Position numbers and translations under genes: made by a program
Part shown: piece by piece, positions 3,670 to 63,677 of the stretch
Layout: every line of letters begins with the position of its first letter
Position numbering within the stretch: position 1 is the first letter of the stretch
The notes under the pieces: generated by a model
The model's input: only the letters and a program-made list of their open reading frames with translations
Told to the model about the DNA's origin: nothing
Databases searched by the model: none
Virus record (IMG/VR): IMGVR_UViG_3300020154_000003
Location: 62,001-126,000 of that record
DNA: 64,000 bases
Direction: 5' to 3' (one strand)

Positions 3670-5340
3670 TTAGTTAAGTAAACCGATTCCGAATGTTTCC
3701 AAGCCATCGCACAACACTTTACCGAAGTAACGGTTGATGATGAACTTCTTAGCGTAACGGGTCATGATACCACGGATAGGCTTGAAGTCGAATGGATTAT
3801 ACATCACAGGAGTCAATTGCATAGGCACGTAAGGTGCGTAGATGTAACCAGACTCAAGGATTGATGAACCTTTGTGACCAACCAACAAAGTGTTAGCAGG
3901 AGCGTAAGGATCACGGAATACTTGGTATCTTCCTTGGAGTGAACCAATTTTCTCGATACCCATGTTATACTTATCCTGTTCAGGAGCAGCGTTAGATACG
4001 TGGAAGTACTCCAAGTTATCAAATACGGCACTGATTTCAGGAGATACTACAACCCAAGTTGCGCCACCTCTAAGAGTTGACTTATGGATTTGTGCAGAAA
4101 TCTGGTTGATCTTAGTGATCAAAGTTTGGTTCCAGTCTTTCTGAGTACCATGATAGGTGTTAGATTGCTTTCTCAAGCCATTGTAATCCCATCTTGTAAC
4201 CCAAGCTGCACCTCTTCTAAGGTCTCTAAGGATTTCACGGTCAACTTCAGCAGCCATCTGTTCTGACAACAATGCTGTCAATTCAGCTTCTGCATCAATG
4301 TTATGGAATGCACTTACGTCTTGCGCAAGTTCAGGAGTCCACTGTGCTCTCATCTTACGAGTCTCAACTGATACAGTTACTTCATCAAGACCGAAAGTTA
4401 CTTCAGCCATTTCTGAATCTTCTTCAAGATCAGAGTAAACTCTGTAAGAGTATACGAATCTAGTTGCACCACCAGTTGCAGCAGTAAGTGCTTGGTAACC
4501 GTTAGTACCTGCGTAAGTTAAGTCGATGATAACAACCAAGTTTCCAGAAGAATCAACGATTTGCTGACCATATTTCTGAACCTTTACGTTGAAAGGAATT
4601 GCAGCACCAGCAGCCAATGAAGCGTCTGAGTAACCTGCACCAGCGTTAAACGCCTTGTTTGAAGTGATTTGCAATGAAGCCAAGAAGCTTTCAGTGTCCA
4701 TAGGAACACCTTGAGGGCCAACAAGCTTACCTGCAGAAGTAGTTGAGAAACCACCGATTGTTGCAGTTACGTAAGTAGCACCAGTTGCATAAGCAGGAGA
4801 TACTGATGTGTTACCAGTTACGGTTACATATCTACCTTTGCTTCTATCGAACAATGATGAACCTTCGTTACCATATTCAGTTGCATAGAATGCATCGTAC
4901 AATGAAGTTGTTTCAAACTGAGTACCAGAGAAACCAGTAGCTGCAGCGTTTGAGTAAGCACCATCAGGTGAAGTGTGCTTCTGGTTAGGGCCAGCAGTTT
5001 GTCTAGTTGAAATCTTAGGGTTCATGTAGTACAACTTACCGATAGGCAAGTTCAATGCTTGAACTGATACGATTTCGTTAGCCAAAAGCTTTGCGAAAAC
5101 TCTTCTAATTACAGGGAATGCAACTGTTTCGAATGCACCGCTAGATGCTGAATCAGTAGATTCGTTGATCATATAAGACAACTGGTTCTCAAACAATTGA
5201 GCGCAGTTTTCTCTAATGTTACCTTCAAGACCTTTCAACAAACCGATTTTGTCCCATCTGTTTGTGATAAGTTCTCTTTGTTCACGAAGTTGTTTCAAAC
5301 CAATGTTACCAACTTCTTTACTTTCTGTTAAAAATCCCAT
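3670..5340 (-). CDS. major capsid protein, T4 gp23 family
   Basis: TRKMRAQWTPELAQDVSAFHNIDAEAELTALLSEQMAAEVDREI and GYIYAPYVP...GIMTRYA gp23 motifs. Confidence 0.97.
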   Translation of the reverse strand: MGFLTESKEVGNIGLKQLREQRELITNRWDKIGLLKGLEGNIRENCAQLFENQLSYMINESTDSASSGAFETVAFPVIRRVFAKLLANEIVSVQALNLPIGKLYYMNPKISTRQTAGPNQKHTSPDGAYSNAAATGFSGTQFETTSLYDAFYATEYGNEGSSLFDRSKGRYVTVTGNTSVSPAYATGATYVTATIGGFSTTSAGKLVGPQGVPMDTESFLASLQITSNKAFNAGAGYSDASLAAGAAIPFNVKVQKYGQQIVDSSGNLVVIIDLTYAGTNGYQALTAATGGATRFVYSYRVYSDLEEDSEMAEVTFGLDEVTVSVETRKMRAQWTPELAQDVSAFHNIDAEAELTALLSEQMAAEVDREILRDLRRGAAWVTRWDYNGLRKQSNTYHGTQKDWNQTLITKINQISAQIHKSTLRGGATWVVVSPEISAVFDNLEYFHVSNAAPEQDKYNMGIEKIGSLQGRYQVFRDPYAPANTLLVGHKGSSILESGYIYAPYVPMQLTPVMYNPFDFKPIRGIMTRYAKKFIINRYFGKVLCDGLETFGIGLLN

Positions 5341-6994: not shown

Positions 6995-7729
6995 TTATAA
7001 CAAGAATTTATTGATGCTTGTTATGATTTTTTTATGTTTATCGTTTTCATTGATGACATTTTCCCCTTTTACAGTGCCTTCAGTGAAACTCTTAGAAATC
7101 TCAGGAAATAGGTACGCTCCCGGAGTACTAGGTGAATGAACTAAGTCAAAACAGATAAGTTCAAAATCATCCTGTACGATGTTTTGGCCTCTAACTTCTT
7201 TTAGACTACCAACACCTCGACTTGAAATACCTAATCTAATCCCTCTCTTTAAATACTCAACAATTTTATCTCCGATCATACAAACAAACCCATCTCTCAT
7301 ATAAGCAGGAGATGTGATTATTTCTAGTGTGCCATAAAGAATGTGTTTATCTTCACCTTCTCCCCACCACATTTTAGTAATTCTGTGAGATACGTTTAAC
7401 AATGAAACTACTGAAGATTCAGGGTGATCAGCTTCACTTATAGCAGAATTCATATTTACTTGTTCCATGTACCTTTGTACTTCAGGAACTAAAACTTCTG
7501 CTGGATAAATTCTACCGTTCTTATTTTTTACACCCCATTTCTGAAGAATGCAATTTATAAGTACTGGTTGATTAGGTTTAATTTGAAAGTTCTCATTCAC
7601 CATTCTGTCAAACAAGTCCTTATTCATCATCTTGTCTACATACCCTGCATCCTCTTCAATGAGTAAACCAAAACCAGTTTCATTTGGCGATAATATTTTA
7701 CTTTCTCTAATTCTCAGTGAGTTCTTCAT
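6995..7729 (-). CDS. prohead protease, T4 gp21 family
   Basis: NKNGRIYP, EADHP, GISSRGVGS, FDLVHSPSTPGA motifs. Confidence 0.95.
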   Translation of the reverse strand: MKNSLRIRESKILSPNETGFGLLIEEDAGYVDKMMNKDLFDRMVNENFQIKPNQPVLINCILQKWGVKNKNGRIYPAEVLVPEVQRYMEQVNMNSAISEADHPESSVVSLLNVSHRITKMWWGEGEDKHILYGTLEIITSPAYMRDGFVCMIGDKIVEYLKRGIRLGISSRGVGSLKEVRGQNIVQDDFELICFDLVHSPSTPGAYLFPEISKSFTEGTVKGENVINENDKHKKIITSINKFLL

Positions 7730-14403: not shown

Positions 14404-16425
14404 TTAGCTGGACATTGAATTTATAATATCATCGTCTATATCCTTCAATTTTTCGTCCTCCAATTCGTTAGACTTAACCACATTTTCTACCTTATTTTCC
14501 TTATAAGCGAAGTTTTCTGGATTTGTCGCCTCATTGTTAAATGTACCATTACTGTATAATAGCTTATCAATTTCGGTGATCATAGTCCTTGCGGTCTTAT
14601 TTAACTGATCGTTTTTCTTGGCAAATTCATCCTCACTTTGCTTTGCAGCCGTGACGTTTTGTTTGCCCATCAAATCTTCTAATAATTCATCAAATGTTTT
14701 CTTTTCAGTAATAATGTTCTTTTGTGAACTTACTGATTCTTGAGTATTTCCCCCTGCTGGTGCGGCTTGACTTGCACTGCCTTGTGGCTCAGGTAAGGCA
14801 GCAGGAGTTTGCGGAGCGTTAGTTGCTCCACCTTCTGGTGGTGGATTGCTTTCAGGCTGTCCTTCACCTCCCTGTGGAGGTGGGCCACCTTGAGTCAATG
14901 CAGCATCAGGGTTTCCGTATTTCTGGTCAATGTCATCAAATACACCAGTCTTAGGGATAATAACGGCAGTATCTTGAAGTTCTTGACTAATCGCTCTTTC
15001 CATTCTCTGGTTTTTCAAATCTTCAACAATTTCTTTATCAGACCAGCCAAGGATATTTCTCTTAGCCCATGTATGTGAAGATGCTGCGATTCCTGATCCT
15101 TCGTTGCGAGTAATTTCAGTGTACAACTGAATTTTAGCAGTTAATGTTTCTGTCTTAAGCTTATCTGCTTGTGTTGAAGGATTGGTTAATGAAAGACTGA
15201 ATTCGTGTAAATCATTTTCATATCCCTTGAGGAACAAATGAATGATTGCCATTTTATTCAATTCTTGCAATAATGCTTGTTGTATTTTGTTGATTTTTTT
15301 AGCAAATCTAACATCCATCTGTGCAAGGTTTTTACCTTCACCTGCACTACCTGAGAAACCAAGGAAAGGTTTAGGGATTCCAAGACCACTAAATAAATTG
15401 TCACGCAAGTAAGCGATGTCAGCAATAGCGTCCAAGTTGGTTGCTCCGGGTAATGTTTCAATCACTGTGCTTTTGCCATCACGTACTGGTACAAATATAT
15501 CTTCGTCATTCCCTAAGATATTAAATCTGTAGTCGATTTGACCGTTGTTTTTATAAACTTGTTGTTGTTTCTTGAATTTAGTAGCAACTTTATATACGTA
15601 TGCTTCAATGTCTTTATCGTCAATGTTACCTACTTCTATTTTGAAAACTCTTTTTTCACCTGCTCTCAAAATACGATAAGTTAACATTGCATCTTCAGCC
15701 ATAACTAATTGTCTGAATACTCTTCTTATTTTATTAAGTACAGAAGAACCATACGGTAAGTGCTTGTCATCACCAAGTAGTCTGAAGTGAGCAATTTCAA
15801 ACATGTTGAATTCGTCACCAGTTACTTTATTTTTGAAAACAGTACGTGCTTTTCTGTCTTTAACTTCGTCTTTTCTTTCCATGTCGAAGTTAACTAGCTG
15901 ACGTACATAACGTATACCCTTTCCTTTTTCTCCTAGCGTGTACACAAAATTATCACCGTATTTGGCAAGATTTCTAGCCCAAAAAGGTAAATTAACATTT
16001 ACGTTTACAACACCGTAGAAAAAGTCTTCAAGAATAGTTTTAATTCTTTCCTTCTTTGAAAATATATTAAGCATTTTACCATTATCACCAATGGTAGTTG
16101 CTTCTTCTGAAATTAAATCGAGGGCTGATGCGATAAGTGGATAGTACTCCATACCTTCGTAGTCGACGTATGCAGGTATTCTATGACCTTCATACTGCAT
16201 GGCTTTTTGAAAACCGTGCTGTTGTACTTGGTAAAATTTATCAAAGATAAGTTCTCTCTGCTGAAGTTCTAATGCTGCTCGTTGAATATCTTCAGGAGTT
16301 TCAGCCTTAAGAATAATTTTCTTTTCTGGTTGTTGGTTCTGATTAGTTTGACCGCCAAACCCGAAACCATCCAAATTAAGAAATGAATTTATATCCTGAT
16401 ATATCGTTTTTTTGTTCTCAGCCAT
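14404..16425 (-). CDS. portal protein, T4 gp20 family
   Basis: QLVMAEDAMLTYRILRAGEKRVFKIEVGN, ETLPGATNL..IADI.YLR motifs. Confidence 0.95.
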   Translation of the reverse strand: MAENKKTIYQDINSFLNLDGFGFGGQTNQNQQPEKKIILKAETPEDIQRAALELQQRELIFDKFYQVQQHGFQKAMQYEGHRIPAYVDYEGMEYYPLIASALDLISEEATTIGDNGKMLNIFSKKERIKTILEDFFYGVVNVNVNLPFWARNLAKYGDNFVYTLGEKGKGIRYVRQLVNFDMERKDEVKDRKARTVFKNKVTGDEFNMFEIAHFRLLGDDKHLPYGSSVLNKIRRVFRQLVMAEDAMLTYRILRAGEKRVFKIEVGNIDDKDIEAYVYKVATKFKKQQQVYKNNGQIDYRFNILGNDEDIFVPVRDGKSTVIETLPGATNLDAIADIAYLRDNLFSGLGIPKPFLGFSGSAGEGKNLAQMDVRFAKKINKIQQALLQELNKMAIIHLFLKGYENDLHEFSLSLTNPSTQADKLKTETLTAKIQLYTEITRNEGSGIAASSHTWAKRNILGWSDKEIVEDLKNQRMERAISQELQDTAVIIPKTGVFDDIDQKYGNPDAALTQGGPPPQGGEGQPESNPPPEGGATNAPQTPAALPEPQGSASQAAPAGGNTQESVSSQKNIITEKKTFDELLEDLMGKQNVTAAKQSEDEFAKKNDQLNKTARTMITEIDKLLYSNGTFNNEATNPENFAYKENKVENVVKSNELEDEKLKDIDDDIINSMSS

Positions 16426-16494: not shown

Positions 16495-18546
16495 TTATCG
16501 GTATTTATTTCCGAAGACCCATGCGTTTGAGCCATAGGGGTTATTTCTATGAACTACATAATCATGTGAGTCTGGCATTTTAGTTTCTGCCTCTCTAATA
16601 TGCTCATTATCATTTACAACCAGTATTGCATTTAACATACTTTTAACTCTTTCTACATTATCATTGACTTTATGTAGTTCGCAGTTAATTACATATAGTG
16701 CAATCGCCAATCCCATAATCAAATCATCATGGAATGTTCGTTTATGGTCAGCAAGACGATTCTTATTTTCAACAATTACGAAGGTTTTGAATTCGTTGGT
16801 CAACCTAACCGAACGAATAACAACATCCTCCATCCTGACACATCTCTCCATTTCTTGAAGTACCAAAGGGCGATTACTACCAATCATAAATCCCGGAATT
16901 AAGTCAACCTTTTTAGTTTGACCATTACCAGCATCGCGTTCAACAGTCTTCACATAAACGTTAAGTCTGTCTCTTGATGGCTTGTGCTGGACATCGGAAT
17001 AGTGTACGTTATTATATCCGAACATTTTCAATGATTCCATTGCAGACACACCGTAACCACCACTCACGTCAATTACACAATATGCATTATTGTACTTTTG
17101 TCCATAGTAATAGGCCATTTCAGCTAATTGCTGTGGTGTTACTTTACCACAGTATTCAGCAACTTCTTCTGAAATAGTTCTTTTTCTCTTTCTCGTTTTT
17201 TTGATTCCGTTATGTAGGTATTCTTGATCGACTAATGTTTCAGTAGTTTTCAGAATCACGATAGTTGAAAAGTCTTCTCCATAACCACTGGCAACGTCAA
17301 GAGCCATAACGTATTTTGCTTCAGGAATTGGGTCTTCGAAAATGTACATGAATTTATCTGTGTACTCAGTACGAAGAGGCTGTCTTTGTTCGTTATCTTC
17401 AATACGCTTTACAAATTCCTCATTGATGAAGTTATCACCAGAACCTAAAAACGAACAAAGAATCTCTTGAGCAAGTCTTCGCATGTCACCGTTGTAACCT
17501 GCCTTTGCATTTTCAAACCAACTACTGGTTGCAGAAAATCTTTTCTTAATTAACTCATCACGAACTTCTTTTGTAAAATTGTCGTCCTTAATTCGTATTT
17601 CAGTATCTTTTCCTTCGTCCTTAACCCACTCAAGATCAATCTCACCAGTTTCTTTATTGCGTATGTATCTAGGATCGTTATACCACCACAATTCAATAGC
17701 ATTAACGTATGGTTTTTTACCTTCCGATCTAGCTACAACGGATGAGTTGAAGGTTTTATAAAAAATAGGGTCTAAACCATTTGGAGTCGAAACAAAAATT
17801 ACGCGACCGCCAGTGTTTCGTACTGCAGGGCCAGCAGATTCCCAAAACTTTTCTCCCTTCTCCGTCCACGCAGTTTCATCCCAAAATACTAGCGTAGGTG
17901 TCGGCCCTCTAAGTTTGGTCGCAGCAAAAGCTTTTACTTGACTACCATTCGAATATTTTTTGTGACCCATAGAATCTTTACCACCGACTTTAGCAAGGCT
18001 AGGTCGCACGTATGATGGACAGTTCTCAATGAAATCAATGATGTCACTCATCAACTCATCACGAGCGGTTTCAAGTTTATCCGCAATAACTGCTACGTAT
18101 CTATTTTTATTGAAAGTAATATACCACGCGATATATGCACAAGTTGTTGTTGACACACCAGCCTGTCTGTATTTGTTAGCTACATTCTCTTTGTTAGACA
18201 TGTAAGCTTTGATGAGTTCCTTTTGGAATGGGAAAAGTTTGAAAGGCACGATTGAACCACCATCTCCGACTGTTTGGTCAAATACGGTTAGATAAGTCTC
18301 AATGTAATAAACTGGATCGATACCACATCTGTAGATTTCATATGCCTGTTCATCAACATTGAGAAGATTCGCTGGTTTAGCTTCCCCACTTTTTGTGATT
18401 ACAATGGGTTGGTTAACGTGTCGTTTTCTTAACTCACTAACTAATTTTTTGAGTTCTATCTTCCTGAGTTCATCAGTAGTAAGTGGACGATCATTATTAT
18501 CCGGTATAAAGTCTAAATCATCATCATCAGTTTTTTTCTTACTCAT
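16495..18546 (-). CDS. terminase large subunit, T4 gp17 family
   Basis: KYRQAGVST, WDETAW, STPNG, ALDVASG, HDDLIM motifs. Confidence 0.95.
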   Translation of the reverse strand: MSKKKTDDDDLDFIPDNNDRPLTTDELRKIELKKLVSELRKRHVNQPIVITKSGEAKPANLLNVDEQAYEIYRCGIDPVYYIETYLTVFDQTVGDGGSIVPFKLFPFQKELIKAYMSNKENVANKYRQAGVSTTTCAYIAWYITFNKNRYVAVIADKLETARDELMSDIIDFIENCPSYVRPSLAKVGGKDSMGHKKYSNGSQVKAFAATKLRGPTPTLVFWDETAWTEKGEKFWESAGPAVRNTGGRVIFVSTPNGLDPIFYKTFNSSVVARSEGKKPYVNAIELWWYNDPRYIRNKETGEIDLEWVKDEGKDTEIRIKDDNFTKEVRDELIKKRFSATSSWFENAKAGYNGDMRRLAQEILCSFLGSGDNFINEEFVKRIEDNEQRQPLRTEYTDKFMYIFEDPIPEAKYVMALDVASGYGEDFSTIVILKTTETLVDQEYLHNGIKKTRKRKRTISEEVAEYCGKVTPQQLAEMAYYYGQKYNNAYCVIDVSGGYGVSAMESLKMFGYNNVHYSDVQHKPSRDRLNVYVKTVERDAGNGQTKKVDLIPGFMIGSNRPLVLQEMERCVRMEDVVIRSVRLTNEFKTFVIVENKNRLADHKRTFHDDLIMGLAIALYVINCELHKVNDNVERVKSMLNAILVVNDNEHIREAETKMPDSHDYVVHRNNPYGSNAWVFGNKYR

Positions 18547-27258: not shown

Positions 27259-27334
27259 TGGGGCGATGAGTAGGAGTCGAACCTACATCTGCCCGCCTCA
27301 ATGCAGGCCGTGTTACCACAACACTTCCCTCGCC
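27259..27334 (-). tRNA. atypical tRNA (His-type 8-bp acceptor, 8-nt loop CATTGAGG)
   Basis: D and T arms intact, encoded CCA, anticodon ambiguous. Confidence 0.6.
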
Positions 27335-31895: not shown

Positions 31896-31967
31896 TGTAT
31901 GTTCGTCTAGGGGTCTAGGACACTCCCTTCATCGGGGGAAACATTGGTTCGAATCCAATACATACTC
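31896..31967 (+). tRNA. atypical tRNA (Glu-type D arm, irregular anticodon loop TTCATC[G])
   Basis: Acceptor GTATGT/ACATAC, T arm ATTGG-TTCGAAT-CCAAT. Confidence 0.55.
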
Positions 31968-57593: not shown

Positions 57594-58520
57594 ATGAACA
57601 AGGAATTACTAGACTTCGTAAGGGTTTTATCTGAAAACGATAAAAAGAATCTATGTCAAAAAGCATTGAAAACCTCTGAAGAAGTTGGTGAATTAGCGAA
57701 AGCAGTATTACCATTTGAAAATGCTGCAGGTACGCTGCATAGATTTTCTGACCGAAGAAAAATTCTTGAAAATGTTGCTGACGTTATTTTGAGTGCAATA
57801 TCAATAGCATATGATATGAAGTTCACGGATGAGGCGATTGAAGATATGATGCTTGAGAAGTCTAAAAAGTGGCAGGGAATACAGGCGAAGGAAGACAAAA
57901 CAAAATTTCCTTTACCATATGAAATTCATGTCACGGTTCAACGACCTGAGGATATTGAGGAATTTAAGAAAGTGTGCGGTGTGATTGGGGTTAAACCGAT
58001 CATCATTGAATTGGAAAAGAATCAGGAAGTGGTAATGCAGGATGTTATGACATCATCCGTTCATTTCGGGGATAATAGGTCTGCTTACGAAGAGGTTGAA
58101 AGAATCTCAAAAAGATTGGCATTACATTCGTTCAATGTTTTGAGAAGTAAAATTGAGACTGTGCCTTGGCATCCCGCAGCACCGACAAGGAATGGTGAAA
58201 GTAAAATGCCAATGGACTGTTATTTTGAGTCGCATTTAAGAATTGTAACTGACAAAACTAAATACGATAATTTGAGGGCGATTGCGGAATATCATGAAGC
58301 ACATTTATCAAGAAACTACTTTAAGAAATTAAGCGAAACGGAATACATCATCATGATGACGTTAAGATCGTATGATGATAATGCAGAAAATTTCAAAAGT
58401 AGAGTGGAAGCATTAAAGAACGAATTGCGTGATTTGAATTTTAATGTTGATAAGGTTGAAATTGAATTTGCGGTTTACGATACAAAAACATCTCACGACA
58501 TTGCGTGGATAGGGAAATAA
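57594..58520 (+). CDS. MazG-like NTP pyrophosphatase fused to an uncharacterised domain
   Basis: KTSEEVGELAKA...ENVADV. Confidence 0.75.
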   Translation: MNKELLDFVRVLSENDKKNLCQKALKTSEEVGELAKAVLPFENAAGTLHRFSDRRKILENVADVILSAISIAYDMKFTDEAIEDMMLEKSKKWQGIQAKEDKTKFPLPYEIHVTVQRPEDIEEFKKVCGVIGVKPIIIELEKNQEVVMQDVMTSSVHFGDNRSAYEEVERISKRLALHSFNVLRSKIETVPWHPAAPTRNGESKMPMDCYFESHLRIVTDKTKYDNLRAIAEYHEAHLSRNYFKKLSETEYIIMMTLRSYDDNAENFKSRVEALKNELRDLNFNVDKVEIEFAVYDTKTSHDIAWIGK

Positions 58521-59431: not shown

Positions 59432-59514
59432 GCCCTCATGATGTAACGGTAGCCATGCTGGTCTAAGAAGCCAGTGCTGTAAAAGGCGTGTCAGTTCGAA
59501 TCTGACTGAGGGTA
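59432..59514 (+). tRNA. tRNA-Leu(AAG)
   Basis: CTGGT-CTAAGAA-GCCAG, long arm, A73. Confidence 0.88.
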
Positions 59515-59691
59515 CAAAAACTTAAAATTTAATATGGCAGTTTATAGACCAGTATGTATTTGTCCTGATTGTGGAAAACCGTTTGAAGAAGTACACAAAC
59601 AGTATGATCCTTCTGTAGTGTTTGTTGGAGATACTTTTATGTATTATGATTTCGATGGACATGTCTGCGAAAGGAAGGAAGAAGAAGTTGA

Positions 59692-59901
59692 ATGAAAGAA
59701 TATGAACCATACCATGTTTGGATGTATAGAAAAGCACCCGAACTTCCTGTTGATTACATATTGAGCAATAAGGAGTGTATGGATTATTTGATGAAGGATG
59801 ATAATTTATTTGATTGGTTGGAAGTTTTAGTTGCTCTTAAAGAGCATAACATGATGGTTGAAATTGCGGATAAGAACCTCGATGAAATCCTATCTACTTA
59901 A
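59692..59901 (+). CDS. hypothetical protein
   Basis: 69 aa ORF. Confidence 0.5.
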   Translation: MKEYEPYHVWMYRKAPELPVDYILSNKECMDYLMKDDNLFDWLEVLVALKEHNMMVEIADKNLDEILST

Positions 59902-59905
59902 GAAA

Positions 59906-60148
59906 ATGGAAGACTTGTTTTTTGATAGTTATTACGATGAACTAATCTCTGAAAGAGAGAATGAGATAACTAGGAAAGCATTATTAAGTAATAGAATTTT
60001 AAAAGGATCAATGTATATGGATGTAGGATATGTTTATGCACCATACATACCTATAACTACAACACCATTGACCGTTAACCCAAATATTGTGGGTCGATAT
60101 AAAAAGAAGTGCGTTATGGGAAAATATTATGGAAGACTCGTTCTTTGA
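59906..60148 (+). CDS. small protein carrying a copy of the major-capsid C-terminal motif
   Basis: KGSMYMDVGYVYAPYIP...RYKKK...YYG vs capsid KGSSILESGYIYAPYVP...RYAKK...YFG. Confidence 0.7.
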   Translation: MEDLFFDSYYDELISERENEITRKALLSNRILKGSMYMDVGYVYAPYIPITTTPLTVNPNIVGRYKKKCVMGKYYGRLVL

Positions 60149-60344
60149 TGAGTATGAAGAATTAATACGTAAAAGAGAAAAACAGGTAACTGATCACGCC
60201 TTTGCAATGAACAAGTTAGATCGTTCAATGGGCGACATACAACAAAAACTAGTATTATTAGGTACATCAATAAATAATTTTGGTGAGGTACTTACTACAC
60301 ACAATCTGAAATTAGAAGAAGTTCTAAAAAAGATGAAAAAATAA
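60129..60344 (+). CDS. hypothetical protein, N-terminus paralogous to 59906 ORF
   Basis: MEDSFFDEYEELIRKREKQVT vs MEDLFFDSYYDELISERENEIT. Confidence 0.6.
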   Translation: MEDSFFDEYEELIRKREKQVTDHAFAMNKLDRSMGDIQQKLVLLGTSINNFGEVLTTHNLKLEEVLKKMKK

Positions 60345-60347
60345 TTA

Positions 60348-60430
60348 GCCCCCGTGGTGGAACGGCAGACACAGCAGACTTAGAATCTGCCGCCTTCAGT
60401 GGCATGAGAGTTCGAATCTCTCCGGGGGCA
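60348..60430 (+). tRNA. tRNA-Leu(TAG)
   Basis: GCAGA-CTTAGAA-TCTGC. Confidence 0.93.
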
Positions 60431-60557
60431 CTATGAAAGAATTTAAATTTAAAATCAGATTTTATTACTGGTACTGGTTTACATTCTCTAACTGGAAATA
60501 TTTCTTGAGATTCATACTCCTATTTCCAATCATGTACTGGTTAACACAATTTATATT

Positions 60558-61539: not shown

Positions 61540-61612
61540 GTCTTAGTAGCACAATTGGCGGTGCAACGATCTCTAAAATCGGAGGATGCGGGTTCGATCC
61601 CCGCCTAAGGCA
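61540..61612 (+). tRNA. amber suppressor tRNA (CTA)
   Basis: GTCTTAG/CTAAGGC acceptor; CGAT-CTCTAAA-ATCG. Confidence 0.85.
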
Positions 61613-61613
61613 C

Positions 61614-61894: not shown

Positions 61895-62674
61895 ATGAAA
61901 GCAAAAAAAACTAAGAAAACTGCTAAAACCAGCACAAAAAGACCCGCCAAGAAGAAGCCTACCGCAAAAGCAAAAGCCTCATCAAAGACCAAAGCGAAAG
62001 CTAAGGTTAAATCCAAATTGGATTATACACACATAATCGCAGTACTGGACAAATCCAGTTCTATGCATTCAGTAGCGAATGCTGCCATGAAAGGTTTTAA
62101 TGAATTCCTGACATCACAAAAAGCCTTAAAAGGGAAAGCCACTATGGACGTGTTATTGTTCAGTAGTGCTGATAAAATCGACTATATCTCGCAGGGTGTT
62201 GACATCAGTGAGGTTGCTGAATTAACCTCTGAGACTTATCGTCCTCAGGGCACTACAGCATTATTCGATGCAATCGTGAAAGCCACTTCAACTTACAAAC
62301 TGAAGTATGATGAATTGAAGCCTTCAAAGAGACCCGATAAGATTTTGGTAATTGCTATTACTGATGGAGAAGAAAATAGCAGCACAGAATTTCCTATAAG
62401 TAAAGTTGGTGATGTCAAAGCATTGATCACAAAACGTAAGTCGGAAAACTGGCAGTTTATGTTCTTGTGCTCGACTGAAGATGCCGTGTTAACTGGCGAA
62501 TCTCTTGGAGTTTCAAGAGGTAACACAATGCAGTTTACCAATAGCGATCTTGGTAATCAAGCCATGTACTCTGCTGTGGCATCTGCTGCGACCATGTACA
62601 GATCGACTTCACTGAGAAGTAAGAGTTTTAGCAAGGTCAGCGATAATTTGCTGGCTGAGGATGATATTTCCTAA
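61895..62674 (+). CDS. vWA domain protein with Lys/Ala-rich N-tail
   Basis: MIDAS LDKSSSM, GTTALFDAI, ITDGEENSS. Confidence 0.88.
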   Translation: MKAKKTKKTAKTSTKRPAKKKPTAKAKASSKTKAKAKVKSKLDYTHIIAVLDKSSSMHSVANAAMKGFNEFLTSQKALKGKATMDVLLFSSADKIDYISQGVDISEVAELTSETYRPQGTTALFDAIVKATSTYKLKYDELKPSKRPDKILVIAITDGEENSSTEFPISKVGDVKALITKRKSENWQFMFLCSTEDAVLTGESLGVSRGNTMQFTNSDLGNQAMYSAVASAATMYRSTSLRSKSFSKVSDNLLAEDDIS

Positions 62675-63585: not shown

Positions 63586-63658
63586 GAGAGTATGGCTCAG
63601 TGGTTAGAGCAAGGACTTCTAAACTCCTAGGTCGTGGGTTCGAATCCCACTACTCTCT
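63586..63658 (+). tRNA. amber suppressor tRNA (CTA)
   Basis: GAGAGTA/TACTCTC acceptor; AGGAC-TTCTAAA-CTCCT (C31:C39 mismatch). Confidence 0.75.
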
Positions 63659-63677
63659 CTCAATAAAATAAAAAGTT

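What the first reader, a model, noticed from the sequence alone, without database searches (positions are those of the whole stretch)
59906..60148. Mini-protein copying the major capsid C-terminus inside a tRNA operon
The 80-aa ORF has KGSMYMDVGYVYAPYIPITTTPLTVNP-NIVGRYKKKCVMGKYYGRL, collinear with the capsid's KGSSILESGYIYAPYVPMQLTPVMYNP...GIMTRYAKKFIINRYFGKV. It is fused to an N-terminal helix shared with the next ORF. Established: capsid proteins trigger defences such as CapRel and Lit. Inference: a decoy for a capsid sensor or an assembly modulator.
Basis: partly seen in the sequence, partly recalled or inferred. Interest (0 to 1): 0.65.

Follow-up and report, generated by a model that had tools for sequence, protein, structure and literature searches.

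The report
Capsid-hairpin mimic mini-protein family
A huge soil phage carries a small, conserved gene whose product copies one beta-hairpin from the edge of its own capsid protein, and it belongs to a widespread, apparently undescribed family of such capsid-piece mini-proteins whose function is still unknown.

Summary
Window 59906-60148 (+) encodes an 80-aa protein, or 88 aa from a conserved ATG at 59882. Residues 33-79 match residues 490-543 of the phage's own Gp23-type major capsid protein (MCP) with 39% identity (E 2e-13). Residues 1-31 match the start of the next ORF. The gene sits between two tRNA-Leu genes in a 52-tRNA region.

It is not a decaying fragment. A relative at about 81% nucleotide identity keeps it, with dN/dS 0.12 (p 3e-7). 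Positional or sequence counterparts occur in 371-kb and 519-kb phages. About 200 similar small proteins of 44-140 aa were found, and the sampled genomes that are near-complete (four of five) also have a complete MCP.

The copied piece maps to the P-domain strand/P-loop/strand element. In T4 this element carries a gp31-bypass mutation and head-length mutations. The same phages also encode separate small ORFs with the MCP spine helix and the N-arm ("Gol") segment.

In one lineage the mini-gene lies in the portal operon. In another contig an MCP gene is split at the same boundary. I favour a role in head folding or assembly by self-mimicry (about 0.4) over an immune decoy (about 0.2). Nothing here shows expression or binding.

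The parts
59906..60148 (+). Mini-protein gene (80 aa plus stop). An alternative ATG at 59882, conserved in the relative, would give 88 aa and overlap the upstream ORF by 20 nt.
   Evidence: Translation. The orthologue P0004 is 83% identical and 88 aa. dN/dS is 0.118, binomial p 2.6e-7. Soil-metagenome contigs cover the ORF with 27-57 substitutions and no gaps.
59906..60001 (+). N-terminal helix module (residues 1-32), shared with the next ORF and with a tandem array of paralogues in the 371-kb relative.
   Evidence: 48% identity to P0003 residues 1-30. AF2 helix at 3-28, pLDDT about 70-76. An HMM of the motif finds five more members in L075/G001 at E 3e-13 to 6e-9. dN/dS is 0.09.
60002..60145 (+). 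MCP-like module (residues 33-80): a copy of the P-domain strand / P-loop / strand element, with the P-loop 7 residues shorter than in the MCP.
   Evidence: It keeps the MCP-family invariant residues G, Y, Y-A-P-Y, P and R-Y. dN/dS is 0.14. AF2 predicts coil when the protein is alone, pLDDT 56-65.
60129..60344 (+). Neighbouring 71-aa paralogue (P0003). It has the same N-terminal helix and an unrelated C-terminal part that gives only weak coiled-coil-type matches. Its start overlaps the mini-gene's end by 20 nt.
   Evidence: It is conserved in L009 at 79% identity with dN/dS 0.097.
3670..5340 (-). Complete major capsid protein gene (556 aa, Gp23 family).
   Evidence: Pfam Gp23 1.4e-73. T4 gp23 structures match at E 5e-22. 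It is the only full-length Gp23 match in the genome.
3712..3873 (-). The MCP segment that is copied (residues 490-543): strands 499-507 and 526-533, plus the start of strand 539-545, with the P-loop between the first two.
   Evidence: Alignment. Secondary structure from the AF2 model of the MCP. Correspondence to T4 gp23 439-478.
59432..59515 (+). tRNA-Leu(aag), the upstream boundary of the small-ORF block.
   Evidence: The same tRNA flanks the orthologous block in L009 and L075.
60348..60431 (+). tRNA-Leu(tag), the downstream boundary of the block.
   Evidence: with the same boundary in relatives.
59534..59901 (+). Two co-oriented small ORFs upstream: 53 aa (59534-59695, zinc-ribbon-like) and 69 aa (59692-59901). 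They are tightly packed with the mini-gene.
   Evidence: Both are conserved in L009 at 80% and 65% identity.

Best explanation
This is a real, selected gene for a chimeric mini-protein. It has an N-terminal amphipathic helix, a module shared by a small local paralogue family. Joined to it is a copy of one structural element of the phage's HK97-fold capsid protein: the P-domain beta-strand, P-loop and returning strand.

It belongs to an old family of hairpin-only small proteins found in huge T4-like phages. These phages also carry a complete MCP, and they have separate small ORFs that copy the MCP spine helix/E-loop segment and the N-arm segment.

My preferred mechanism is inferred, not shown. 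The hairpin part is unstructured on its own. I propose that it docks by strand addition onto a surface that normally receives the MCP's own hairpin or P-loop. Candidate surfaces are the P-domain of an unassembled or prohead-state MCP subunit at the capsomer edge, or a core or portal component that reads that edge. By this docking it would tune folding or capsomer-to-capsomer joining during head morphogenesis. The N-terminal helix would act as a common adaptor that brings different cargo peptides to the same place.
For: Shown:
- Homology to MCP 490-543.
- Purifying selection on both halves.
- Counterparts in G001 at the same position between the two tRNA-Leu genes and in G002, whose MCP is only about 48% identical to ours.
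- All four proteins end at the same alignment column and share P-x-T/Y-x-T in place of the MCPs' P-x-Q-L-T.
- 203 small proteins match the four-protein profile at E<=0.01. Among them is an 82-103-aa subfamily, found in 143-476-kb viral contigs. Four of the five searched have a complete MCP; the fifth is 84% complete and shows fragments only.
- Other MCP pieces occur as small ORFs in the same genomes. Three smaller T4-likes have none.
- In G002 and L128 the gene sits in the string terminase, portal, three small ORFs, mini. This is the position of the T4 prohead-core genes 67/68.
- In L126 and in the G001 array it lies next to a spine-helix mimic.
- Alone it is predicted to be coil.

From the literature: in T4 the matching residues include A455 (gp31-bypass), which lies in the P-domain sheet. 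They also include T457, R460 and G461 (head length) in the P-loop at the quasi-threefold contacts. Other gp31-bypass sites lie in the spine helix (PMC9546572; residue mapping).
Against: There is no evidence of transcription, translation, binding or presence in particles. In this window and in G001 the gene is not in the head module. It sits in the tRNA region, about 55 kb from the MCP, and has no copy of the AGTATTTATA motif that precedes the head genes. That would fit early rather than late expression. The portal-operon argument is guilt by association in only one lineage. Neighbours in L125, L126 and L129 are uninformative. The 82-103-aa subfamily shows weaker constraint, with median dN/dS 0.43. 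The tree of the 56 usable columns cannot tell one origin from several.
Confidence: 0.4

Rival explanations
1. Immune decoy or antagonist. The mini-proteins display the most conserved linear motifs of Gp23-type capsid proteins. They would occupy host sensors that recognise newly made capsid protein without activating them, or titrate them before late genes are expressed.
For: Capsid proteins are established triggers. CapRel binds the MCP directly (PMC9712102). Lit is activated by the Gol peptide of T4 gp23 bound to EF-Tu, and Gol is described as the most conserved region of gp23 (PMC3014915). Some Avs proteins sense the MCP (bioRxiv 10.64898/2026.01.04.697583). The pieces copied in these phages are the conserved ones, including a Gol-equivalent segment at G000 139539-140150. 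The location of this copy among tRNA and accessory genes, without the late-type motif, is compatible with early expression.
Against: No defence-related context or anti-defence family match was seen in Pfam or PHROGs. PADLOC was not run. Known sensors read folded capsid surfaces or, for Gol, are activated by the free peptide, so a free copy would more likely trigger than block. Detectable fragments will be the conserved motifs whatever their function, so that argument is partly circular. The portal-operon position in G002/L128 does not fit an early decoy. No literature precedent for a capsid-fragment decoy turned up.
Confidence: 0.2
2. Folding surrogate. The trans-encoded hairpin, and the separate spine-helix mimic, transiently complete the P-domain of nascent MCP chains. 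The MCP's own hairpin is made last. The mimic would lower aggregation or dependence on chaperonin, and would be displaced when the real C-terminus arrives.
For: In T4 the gp31-bypass mutations fall in the two elements that are mimicked: A455V in the hairpin sheet and G292S/V306I/V307I in the spine helix (PMC9546572). The hairpin lies at residues 490-543 of 556 in a protein with large insertions. The mimic is predicted to be disordered when alone.
Against: This is entirely inferential. No co-chaperonin or chaperonin analysis was done for this genome. An intramolecular hairpin should out-compete a trans copy without any need for help. This is really a sub-variant of the morphogenesis idea, not an independent line of evidence.
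Confidence: 0.12
3. Weapon against related co-infecting phages. A dominant-negative capsid fragment poisons capsomer joining of competitors whose MCP carries the consensus hairpin, while the phage's own MCP tolerates it.
For: The mini's hairpin is closer to the MCPs of other phage clades (up to 53% identity) than to its own MCP (39%). It carries the family-consensus GYVYAPYIP, whereas its own MCP has GYIYAPYVP. The best tree did not place it in the starred clade (100/99) formed by its own MCP and that MCP's two close relatives.
Against: With about 48 aligned residues the identity differences are not significant. The AU test does not reject grouping the mini with its own MCP (p 0.18). In G002 the pattern is reversed: its own MCP has the consensus and the mini departs from it. 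There is no experimental precedent in phages that I could find.
Confidence: 0.1
4. Functionless debris. The ORF is a leftover of a partial MCP duplication, or of a 3' MCP segment cut off by a mobile element, and it drifts along with the accessory region.
For: Such debris exists. T4 alt.-1/alt.-2 are annotated as an old partial duplication of alt. In contig L130 an MCP gene is split at profile position 312/313 by a 306-aa ORF, leaving a 73-aa piece that starts where the minis start. An HNH endonuclease gene sits right beside the pair in relative L009.
Against: dN/dS is 0.12 with 23.5 synonymous against 15.5 non-synonymous changes, p 2.6e-7. When one start codon was lost, an intact frame with a replacement start was kept. 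There are no indels in further metagenomic variants. The gene is retained across phages whose accessory genes are only 40-50% identical and whose MCPs are 48% identical. There are hundreds of intact family members. These scenarios may explain the origin of the gene, not its persistence.
Confidence: 0.06
5. Essential second half of a split capsid gene. The mini-protein supplies a hairpin that the MCP lacks, as in contig L130.
For: L130 shows that this arrangement exists in nature at the same boundary.
Against: This phage's MCP is complete and carries its own hairpin, matching profile positions to 354 of 376. The same holds in G001, G002 and G008-G011.
Confidence: 0.02

Closest known systems
Gp23-family major capsid protein (Pfam PF07068), P-domain hairpin of T4 gp23 (about residues 439-478)
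   Same: There is clear sequence homology over the strand/P-loop/strand element. The family-invariant residues are kept.
   Different: Only about 48 of more than 500 residues are present. There is no N-arm, E-loop, spine helix, A-domain or insertion domain, so the protein cannot be a shell subunit. It is fused to an unrelated helix and scores below the Pfam cut-off.
T4 gp67 / gp68 small prohead-core proteins
   Same: These are small proteins (80 and 141 aa) encoded directly after the portal gene. That is the position the mini-gene holds in G002 and L128. By my own comparison, T4 gp67 residues 2-48 weakly resemble gp23 residues 20-67 (35% identity, pairwise E 0.004). A small head protein echoing part of the MCP therefore has a possible precedent.
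   Different: The mini shows no sequence similarity to gp67, gp68 or gp22 (all E>8). The gp67 echo concerns the cleaved propeptide, not the HK97 core. In this window the gene is not near the portal.
Split MCP genes interrupted by a mobile ORF (contig L130; MCP annotated as two features in Bacillus phage SP-15)
   Same: The boundary is the same, at Gp23 profile position about 312, just before the GY-x-YAPY motif. This is a plausible route of origin.
   Different: In L130 the upstream MCP is truncated and needs the piece. Here the MCP is complete and the mini is an extra, diverged copy carrying a foreign N-terminus.
T4 alt.-1 / alt.-2 (partial duplication of a virion-protein gene kept as small ORFs)
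   Same: Small ORFs derived from part of a structural gene, as annotated in the T4 record.
   Different: They lie adjacent to the parent gene and have no known function. The family described here is dispersed, old and under selection.
T4 internal proteins with a shared N-terminal capsid-targeting sequence (IPI, IPII, IPIII, Alt)
   Same: A short conserved N-terminus joined to variable C-terminal cargo, encoded in variable tandem loci. This compares with the N-helix array in G001. The T4 background comes from PMC9026906.
   Different: There is no sequence similarity. An I-S-E motif that could fit the gp21 rule (L/I-x-E) is present in the mini but not in its neighbour. Packaging into heads is untested.
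Capsid-sensing defences and their triggers (Gol/Lit, CapRel, MCP-sensing Avs)
   Same: They concern conserved capsid motifs acting as signals. The N-arm fragment ORF elsewhere in this genome corresponds to the Gol region.
   Different: These are host systems. No phage-encoded capsid-fragment inhibitor of them is known to me or was found in the paper searches.
Satellite-encoded capsid-assembly redirectors, including the MCP homologue Ccm of SaPIbov5 (recalled from memory, not checked here)
   Same: A capsid-protein relative is used to alter assembly of another capsid protein.
   Different: Those are full-fold homologues or scaffolds encoded by parasites of the phage. Here it is a 48-residue element encoded by the phage itself.

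Membership tests
Gp23 major capsid protein family (PF07068) | Match to the family profile above the curated cut-off over most of its length | tested here: not met
   18.3 bits against a cut-off of 24.4, covering profile positions 308-333 of 376 only. It is a homologous fragment, not a capsid subunit.
Gp23 major capsid protein family (PF07068) | Sequence homology of the segment to the phage's own and other Gp23 proteins | tested here: met
   E 2e-13 to its own MCP. tblastn hits fall only on MCP C-terminal regions in GenBank phages and in 79 of 80 IMG/VR loci.
Hairpin-only mini-protein family (defined here) | Small ORF (about 73-165 aa) holding only the strand/P-loop/strand element and ending a few residues after the Y-G motif, in a genome that has a complete MCP | tested here: met
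   Alignments A4-A6. Complete MCPs are present in G000, G001, G002 and G008-G011.
Hairpin-only mini-protein family (defined here) | Single origin distinct from the MCP lineage | tested here: inconclusive
   The tree on 56 columns is unresolved. AU p is 0.19 for all minis as one clade and 0.18 for the mini with its own MCP. The shared end point and motif changes suggest homology.
Split-MCP downstream piece (as in L130) | Upstream MCP ORF truncated at the same boundary | tested here: not met
   The MCP here has 556 aa with its own hairpin.
T4 gp67/gp68-type prohead core proteins | Sequence similarity to gp67 or gp68 | tested here: not met
   Best pairwise E is above 8. There are no PHROG hits.
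T4 gp67/gp68-type prohead core proteins | Gene placed directly downstream of the portal gene | tested here: not met
   Not so in this window: the portal is at 14404-16425 and the mini at 59906. It is so for the family members in G002 and L128.
T4 gp67/gp68-type prohead core proteins | Presence in proheads and cleavage by the prohead protease | not testable with these tools
   This needs proteomics of proheads from a cultured member.
Anti-defence decoy of capsid sensors | Binds and blocks a host capsid-sensing protein | not testable with these tools
   No host is known. Pfam and PHROGs gave no anti-defence family match. PADLOC was not run.
Capsid-targeting-sequence internal proteins | Conserved N-terminal peptide ending in an L/I-x-E protease site, shared by variable cargo proteins | tested here: inconclusive
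   The shared N-terminal module is confirmed. An I-S-E motif at residues 14-16 is in the mini but not in P0003. The sequences are acid-rich, so a chance occurrence is likely.

The most novel reading that the evidence does not exclude
Huge T4-like phages carry a dedicated set of trans-encoded self-mimics of their capsid protein's peripheral domain: an N-arm piece, an E-loop/spine-helix piece and the P-loop hairpin. These act together, either by co-assembling into a split P-domain-like unit or by capping capsomer edges. In this way they would control the folding and joining of capsomers in very large heads. That would be a class of morphogenetic factor with no described counterpart. In the G000/G001 lineage a common N-terminal helix would deliver the hairpin and spine-helix mimics.
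Probability: 0.15. Interest if true: 0.85.

Novelty: new variant of a known kind. Interest (0 to 1): 0.62.

Why it matters
If these mini-proteins act on head assembly or folding, they would show a simple and general trick. The phage regulates a self-assembling shell with free copies of its own contact elements. The idea could be tested directly in T4, where the matching residues already have length and chaperonin-bypass phenotypes. If instead they blunt capsid-sensing immunity, they would be the first phage-encoded capsid-fragment antagonists. Either way, several hundred small "hypothetical" ORFs in large uncultured phages gain a defined origin and a testable hypothesis. Annotators also gain a warning that short Gp23 hits are not always broken capsid genes.

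Tried and rejected
- **Complex prediction.** The MCP (26-row alignment) plus the mini returned "no answer", score 0.00. This is no evidence for or against binding.
- **Solved structures.** The mini gave no hits at E<=10.
- **PHROGs.** Nothing for the mini. Its relatives hit only "major head protein" families.
- **ESM Atlas.** The top feature hits were Molydop_binding fragments (score 0.94). No sequence evidence supports this, and Pfam shows no PF01568 match at E<=1, so I rejected the lead as spurious. The Atlas's own model has pLDDT 0.37.
- **RNA evidence.** No listed run is on record as RNA. Runs labelled metatranscriptomic are flagged as probably DNA and are kept only as contigs, so expression is undetermined.
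- **First word search with MCP C-termini in the query.** It was swamped by truncated MCP calls on short contigs. I repeated it with the four minis only.
- **Whole-record searches.** Contigs fetched by the look-up of encoding contigs could not be searched as whole records. IMG/VR members were used instead.
- **Rfam.** No intron was found in the L130 split.
- **N-helix HMM.** It does not detect the small ORFs after the G002 portal, so I make no claim of homology there.
- **Phylogeny of the hairpin.** It has too few columns to decide one origin versus several.
- **Ideas rejected.** A silent cassette for gene conversion of the MCP is unlikely, because 39% protein identity is too diverged for homologous exchange and the frame is under protein-level selection. 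A second vertex-protein (gp24-like) gene is ruled out, because only one full-length Gp23 match exists in the genome.
- **Paper searches.** No description of capsid-fragment mini-proteins was found.

Full report
**What is there**

The window is bases 62001-126000 of a 366-kb IMG/VR virus record, with 36.7% G+C. It holds a Gp23-type head module:
- terminase at 16495-18546
- portal at 14404-16425
- prohead protease at 6995-7729
- MCP at 3670-5340, all on the minus strand

It also holds 52 tRNA genes. The nearest GenBank phages share only about 30% MCP identity: an uncultured 484-kb phage and Microcystis phage Mel-JY01. Sequencing runs that hold the locus are soil metagenomes.

Residues 33-79 align with MCP 490-543 at 39% identity and 65% positives, with one 7-residue gap, E 2e-13. 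Across the whole genome the MCP is the only strong non-self match. Residues 1-31 are 48% identical to the start of the next ORF, 60129-60344, whose start overlaps the mini-gene's end by 20 nt. The block lies between tRNA-Leu(aag) and tRNA-Leu(tag).

**Is it a live gene?**

A Logan contig, L009, is syntenic at about 81% nucleotide identity. It carries an 88-aa orthologue that is 83% identical. The ATG at the MED position is lost there, and the frame starts 8 codons upstream. The window also has an ATG at that position, 59882.

Nei-Gojobori dN/dS is 0.118, from 23.5 synonymous and 15.5 non-synonymous differences, with dS 0.73. This is similar to the neighbouring genes, which range from 0.03 to 0.18. 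Both halves are constrained: 0.09 for the helix and 0.14 for the MCP-like part. The binomial p for the whole gene is 2.6e-7. Contigs from two further soil studies cover the ORF with 27-57 substitutions and no gaps.

The "decaying fragment" reading is therefore rejected on conservation. Expression is untested: no RNA holder was found.

**A family, not a one-off**

A scan of IMG/VR with the mini returned 80 loci. Seventy-nine are ordinary MCP C-termini. The exception is L075 in a 371-kb phage, G001, whose MCP is 85% identical to ours. At the same position between the two tRNA-Leu genes it has a 98-110-aa ORF with the same MCP-like module. Five more small ORFs follow, all sharing the N-terminal helix motif, with HMM E-values from 3e-13 to 6e-9. 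One of these copies the MCP spine helix instead: 56% identity over 36 residues to G001 MCP 348-383, E 1.4e-6.

A 519-kb phage, G002, has an MCP about 48% identical to ours. It carries a 77-aa version.

All four proteins stop at the same alignment column, 3-5 residues after the Y-G motif. The MCPs continue for a further 3-17 residues. The four also share P-x-(T/Y)-x-T where the MCPs mostly have P-x-Q-L-T.

A length-restricted search with the four-protein profile found 203 small proteins at E<=0.01. Among them is a tight 82-103-aa subfamily with a basic insertion of about 25 residues in the loop. Members occur in viral contigs of 143-476 kb. Four of the five searched have a complete MCP. The fifth is 84% complete and shows only fragments. 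None occurs in GenBank phages. Constraint in that subfamily is weaker, with median dN/dS 0.43.

**Other capsid pieces**

A profile search of this genome found further Gp23 fragments outside the window. A 204-aa ORF at genome 139539-140150 holds MCP 70-104 at 57% identity. A frame at 146732-146968 holds MCP 314-372. G001 and G002 have the same kinds of fragment, and G007-G011 have many. Three smaller T4-like records of 174-232 kb have only the MCP. A fourth, of 152 kb, has two full paralogues.

The sample is small. It suggests that the fragments travel as a set in large-genome members of this group.

**What the copied element is**

The MCP aligns with solved T4 gp23 structures at E 5e-22. Mini residues 33-51 map to gp23 439-457. 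An AlphaFold2 model of the MCP has mean pLDDT 64.7, so it is of moderate quality. It places strands at 499-507, 526-533 and 539-545, with a loop between the first two and the spine helix at 336-377.

The T4 capsid structure paper gives the following placements (PMC9546572):
- A455 (gp31-bypass) is in the P-domain sheet.
- T457, R460 and G461 (head-length mutations) are in the P-loop at the quasi-threefold contacts between capsomers.
- G292, V306 and V307 (gp31-bypass) are in the spine helix.

The mini-protein therefore copies the capsomer-edge hairpin. On its own it is predicted as a helix (residues 3-28) followed by low-confidence coil, and the ESM Atlas model has pLDDT 0.37. That is what one would expect of a peptide that becomes ordered only on a partner.

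**Context in other lineages**

In G002 and in contig L128 the gene order is terminase, portal, three small ORFs, mini, two more ORFs, then sigma factors. The genes are tightly packed. T4 places its small prohead-core genes 67 and 68 right after the portal. I found no sequence similarity between the mini and those proteins.

In L126 a 63-aa spine-helix mimic lies two ORFs upstream of the hairpin mimic. In L130 an MCP gene stops at profile position 313. It is followed by a 306-aa ORF with a weak endonuclease-like match, and then by a 73-aa piece covering positions 312-354. This is a natural split at the boundary where the minis begin, and a plausible route of origin. An HNH endonuclease gene sits beside the pair in L009.

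In this window the gene lies in the tRNA/accessory region. It lacks the AGTATTTATA motif that precedes the protease, portal, terminase and other genes.

**Interpretation**

The following are shown:
- a selected, chimeric gene
- homology to the P-domain hairpin
- membership of an old family
- coexistence with a complete MCP and with other MCP-piece ORFs

The following is inferred. The protein acts by mimicry on something that normally contacts that hairpin. The most likely setting is head folding or assembly, given the portal-operon position in one lineage, the pairing with spine-helix mimics, and the T4 genetics of the element. I put this at about 0.4.

Capsid proteins are real triggers (PMC9712102; PMC3014915). 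However, a free trigger peptide would be expected to activate rather than block, and no defence-related signal was found. The remaining alternatives are a folding surrogate (0.12), a weapon against related phages (0.10), debris (0.06) and an essential split-gene half (0.02, refuted for this genome).

**Limits**

There is no expression or binding evidence. The complex prediction gave no verdict. The phylogeny of 56 columns cannot decide between one origin and several. No cultured representative exists in the collections searched.

Noticed in passing
outside the window: G000:C1:139539-140150 (+); L006 holds it: A 204-aa ORF carries a copy of MCP residues 70-104 at 57% identity. This segment aligns with the T4 gp23 region that contains the Gol peptide, the activator of the Lit protease. 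Counterparts exist in G001 (85-aa frame) and G002 (144-aa frame, which also echoes the MCP propeptide).
   Followed up: partly
outside the window: G000:C1:146393-146968 (+); also G007, G008, G010, G011: ORFs copying the MCP E-loop strand plus spine helix often show one or two in-frame TAA codons inside the profile match. In G000 the conserved part lies after the TAA and before the first ATG. This could mean a non-ATG start, two adjacent ORFs, or read-through. It is unresolved.
   Followed up: no
window 61540-61613 and 63586-63659 (+); also 27259-27333 (-) and 31896-31967 (+): There are two tRNAs with anticodon CTA (amber-reading, labelled Pyl by ARAGORN), and one also occurs in each relative locus searched. 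There are also two tRNA-like genes with irregular anticodon loops. ORFs in the window read normally under table 11, so no recoding is claimed.
   Followed up: no
window 3578, 7750, 16450, 18562, 21429, 26767, 29435 (-) and 29955 (+): The exact motif AGTATTTATA lies about 10-35 nt upstream of start codons of the protease, portal, terminase and other genes. With one mismatch allowed there are 25 matches against 10 expected. It is a candidate late-promoter element, close to the reverse of the T4 TATAAATA box.
   Followed up: partly
L130:4404-7222 (NCBI assembly contig): An MCP gene is split into a 418-aa part and a 73-aa part by a 306-aa ORF with a weak Phage_endo_I match. No Rfam intron was detected. 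The split point coincides with the start of the mini-protein family.
   Followed up: partly
L119:4535-4768 (-), L120:4095-4526 (+), L121:3920-4315 (-) (all G002); L128:7001-7351: In the 519-kb phage all three MCP-fragment ORFs (N, middle, C) contain a shared motif T-R-(I/K)-V-(I/L)-(F/C)-E-K. In two of them it is encoded by about 30 nt that are roughly 80% identical (my reading of the sequences printed), and the motif is inserted at different places. It resembles the MCP strand just before the hairpin. It may be a common tag or a small inserted element.
   Followed up: partly
L009:10526-10969 versus window 60346-60557: The close relative has a 147-aa HNH homing-endonuclease gene between the 71-aa paralogue and tRNA-Leu(tag). 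The window lacks it and has a 42-aa ORF after the tRNA instead. This locus is therefore subject to mobile-element traffic.
   Followed up: partly
L075:6143-7338 (G001): A tandem array of five small ORFs shares the mini-protein's N-terminal helix motif but has different C-terminal parts. One part is the MCP spine helix. Another has weak, non-significant similarity to repeats in two proteins of about 2000 aa.
   Followed up: partly
L124 (phage T4, genes 67 and 23): By direct comparison, T4 gp67 residues 2-48 are 35% identical to gp23 residues 20-67 (pairwise E 0.004-0.03). gp22 also weakly resembles the gp23 propeptide. A small core protein echoing part of the MCP may be an old theme.
   Followed up: partly
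window 57594-58520 (+) and 61895-62674 (+): A MazG-like pyrophosphatase fusion (308 aa, PHROG 1247) and a VWA-domain protein with a lysine-rich N-terminus (259 aa) sit among the tRNA genes. Both are highly conserved in the relative, with dN/dS 0.03 and 0.07.
   Followed up: no
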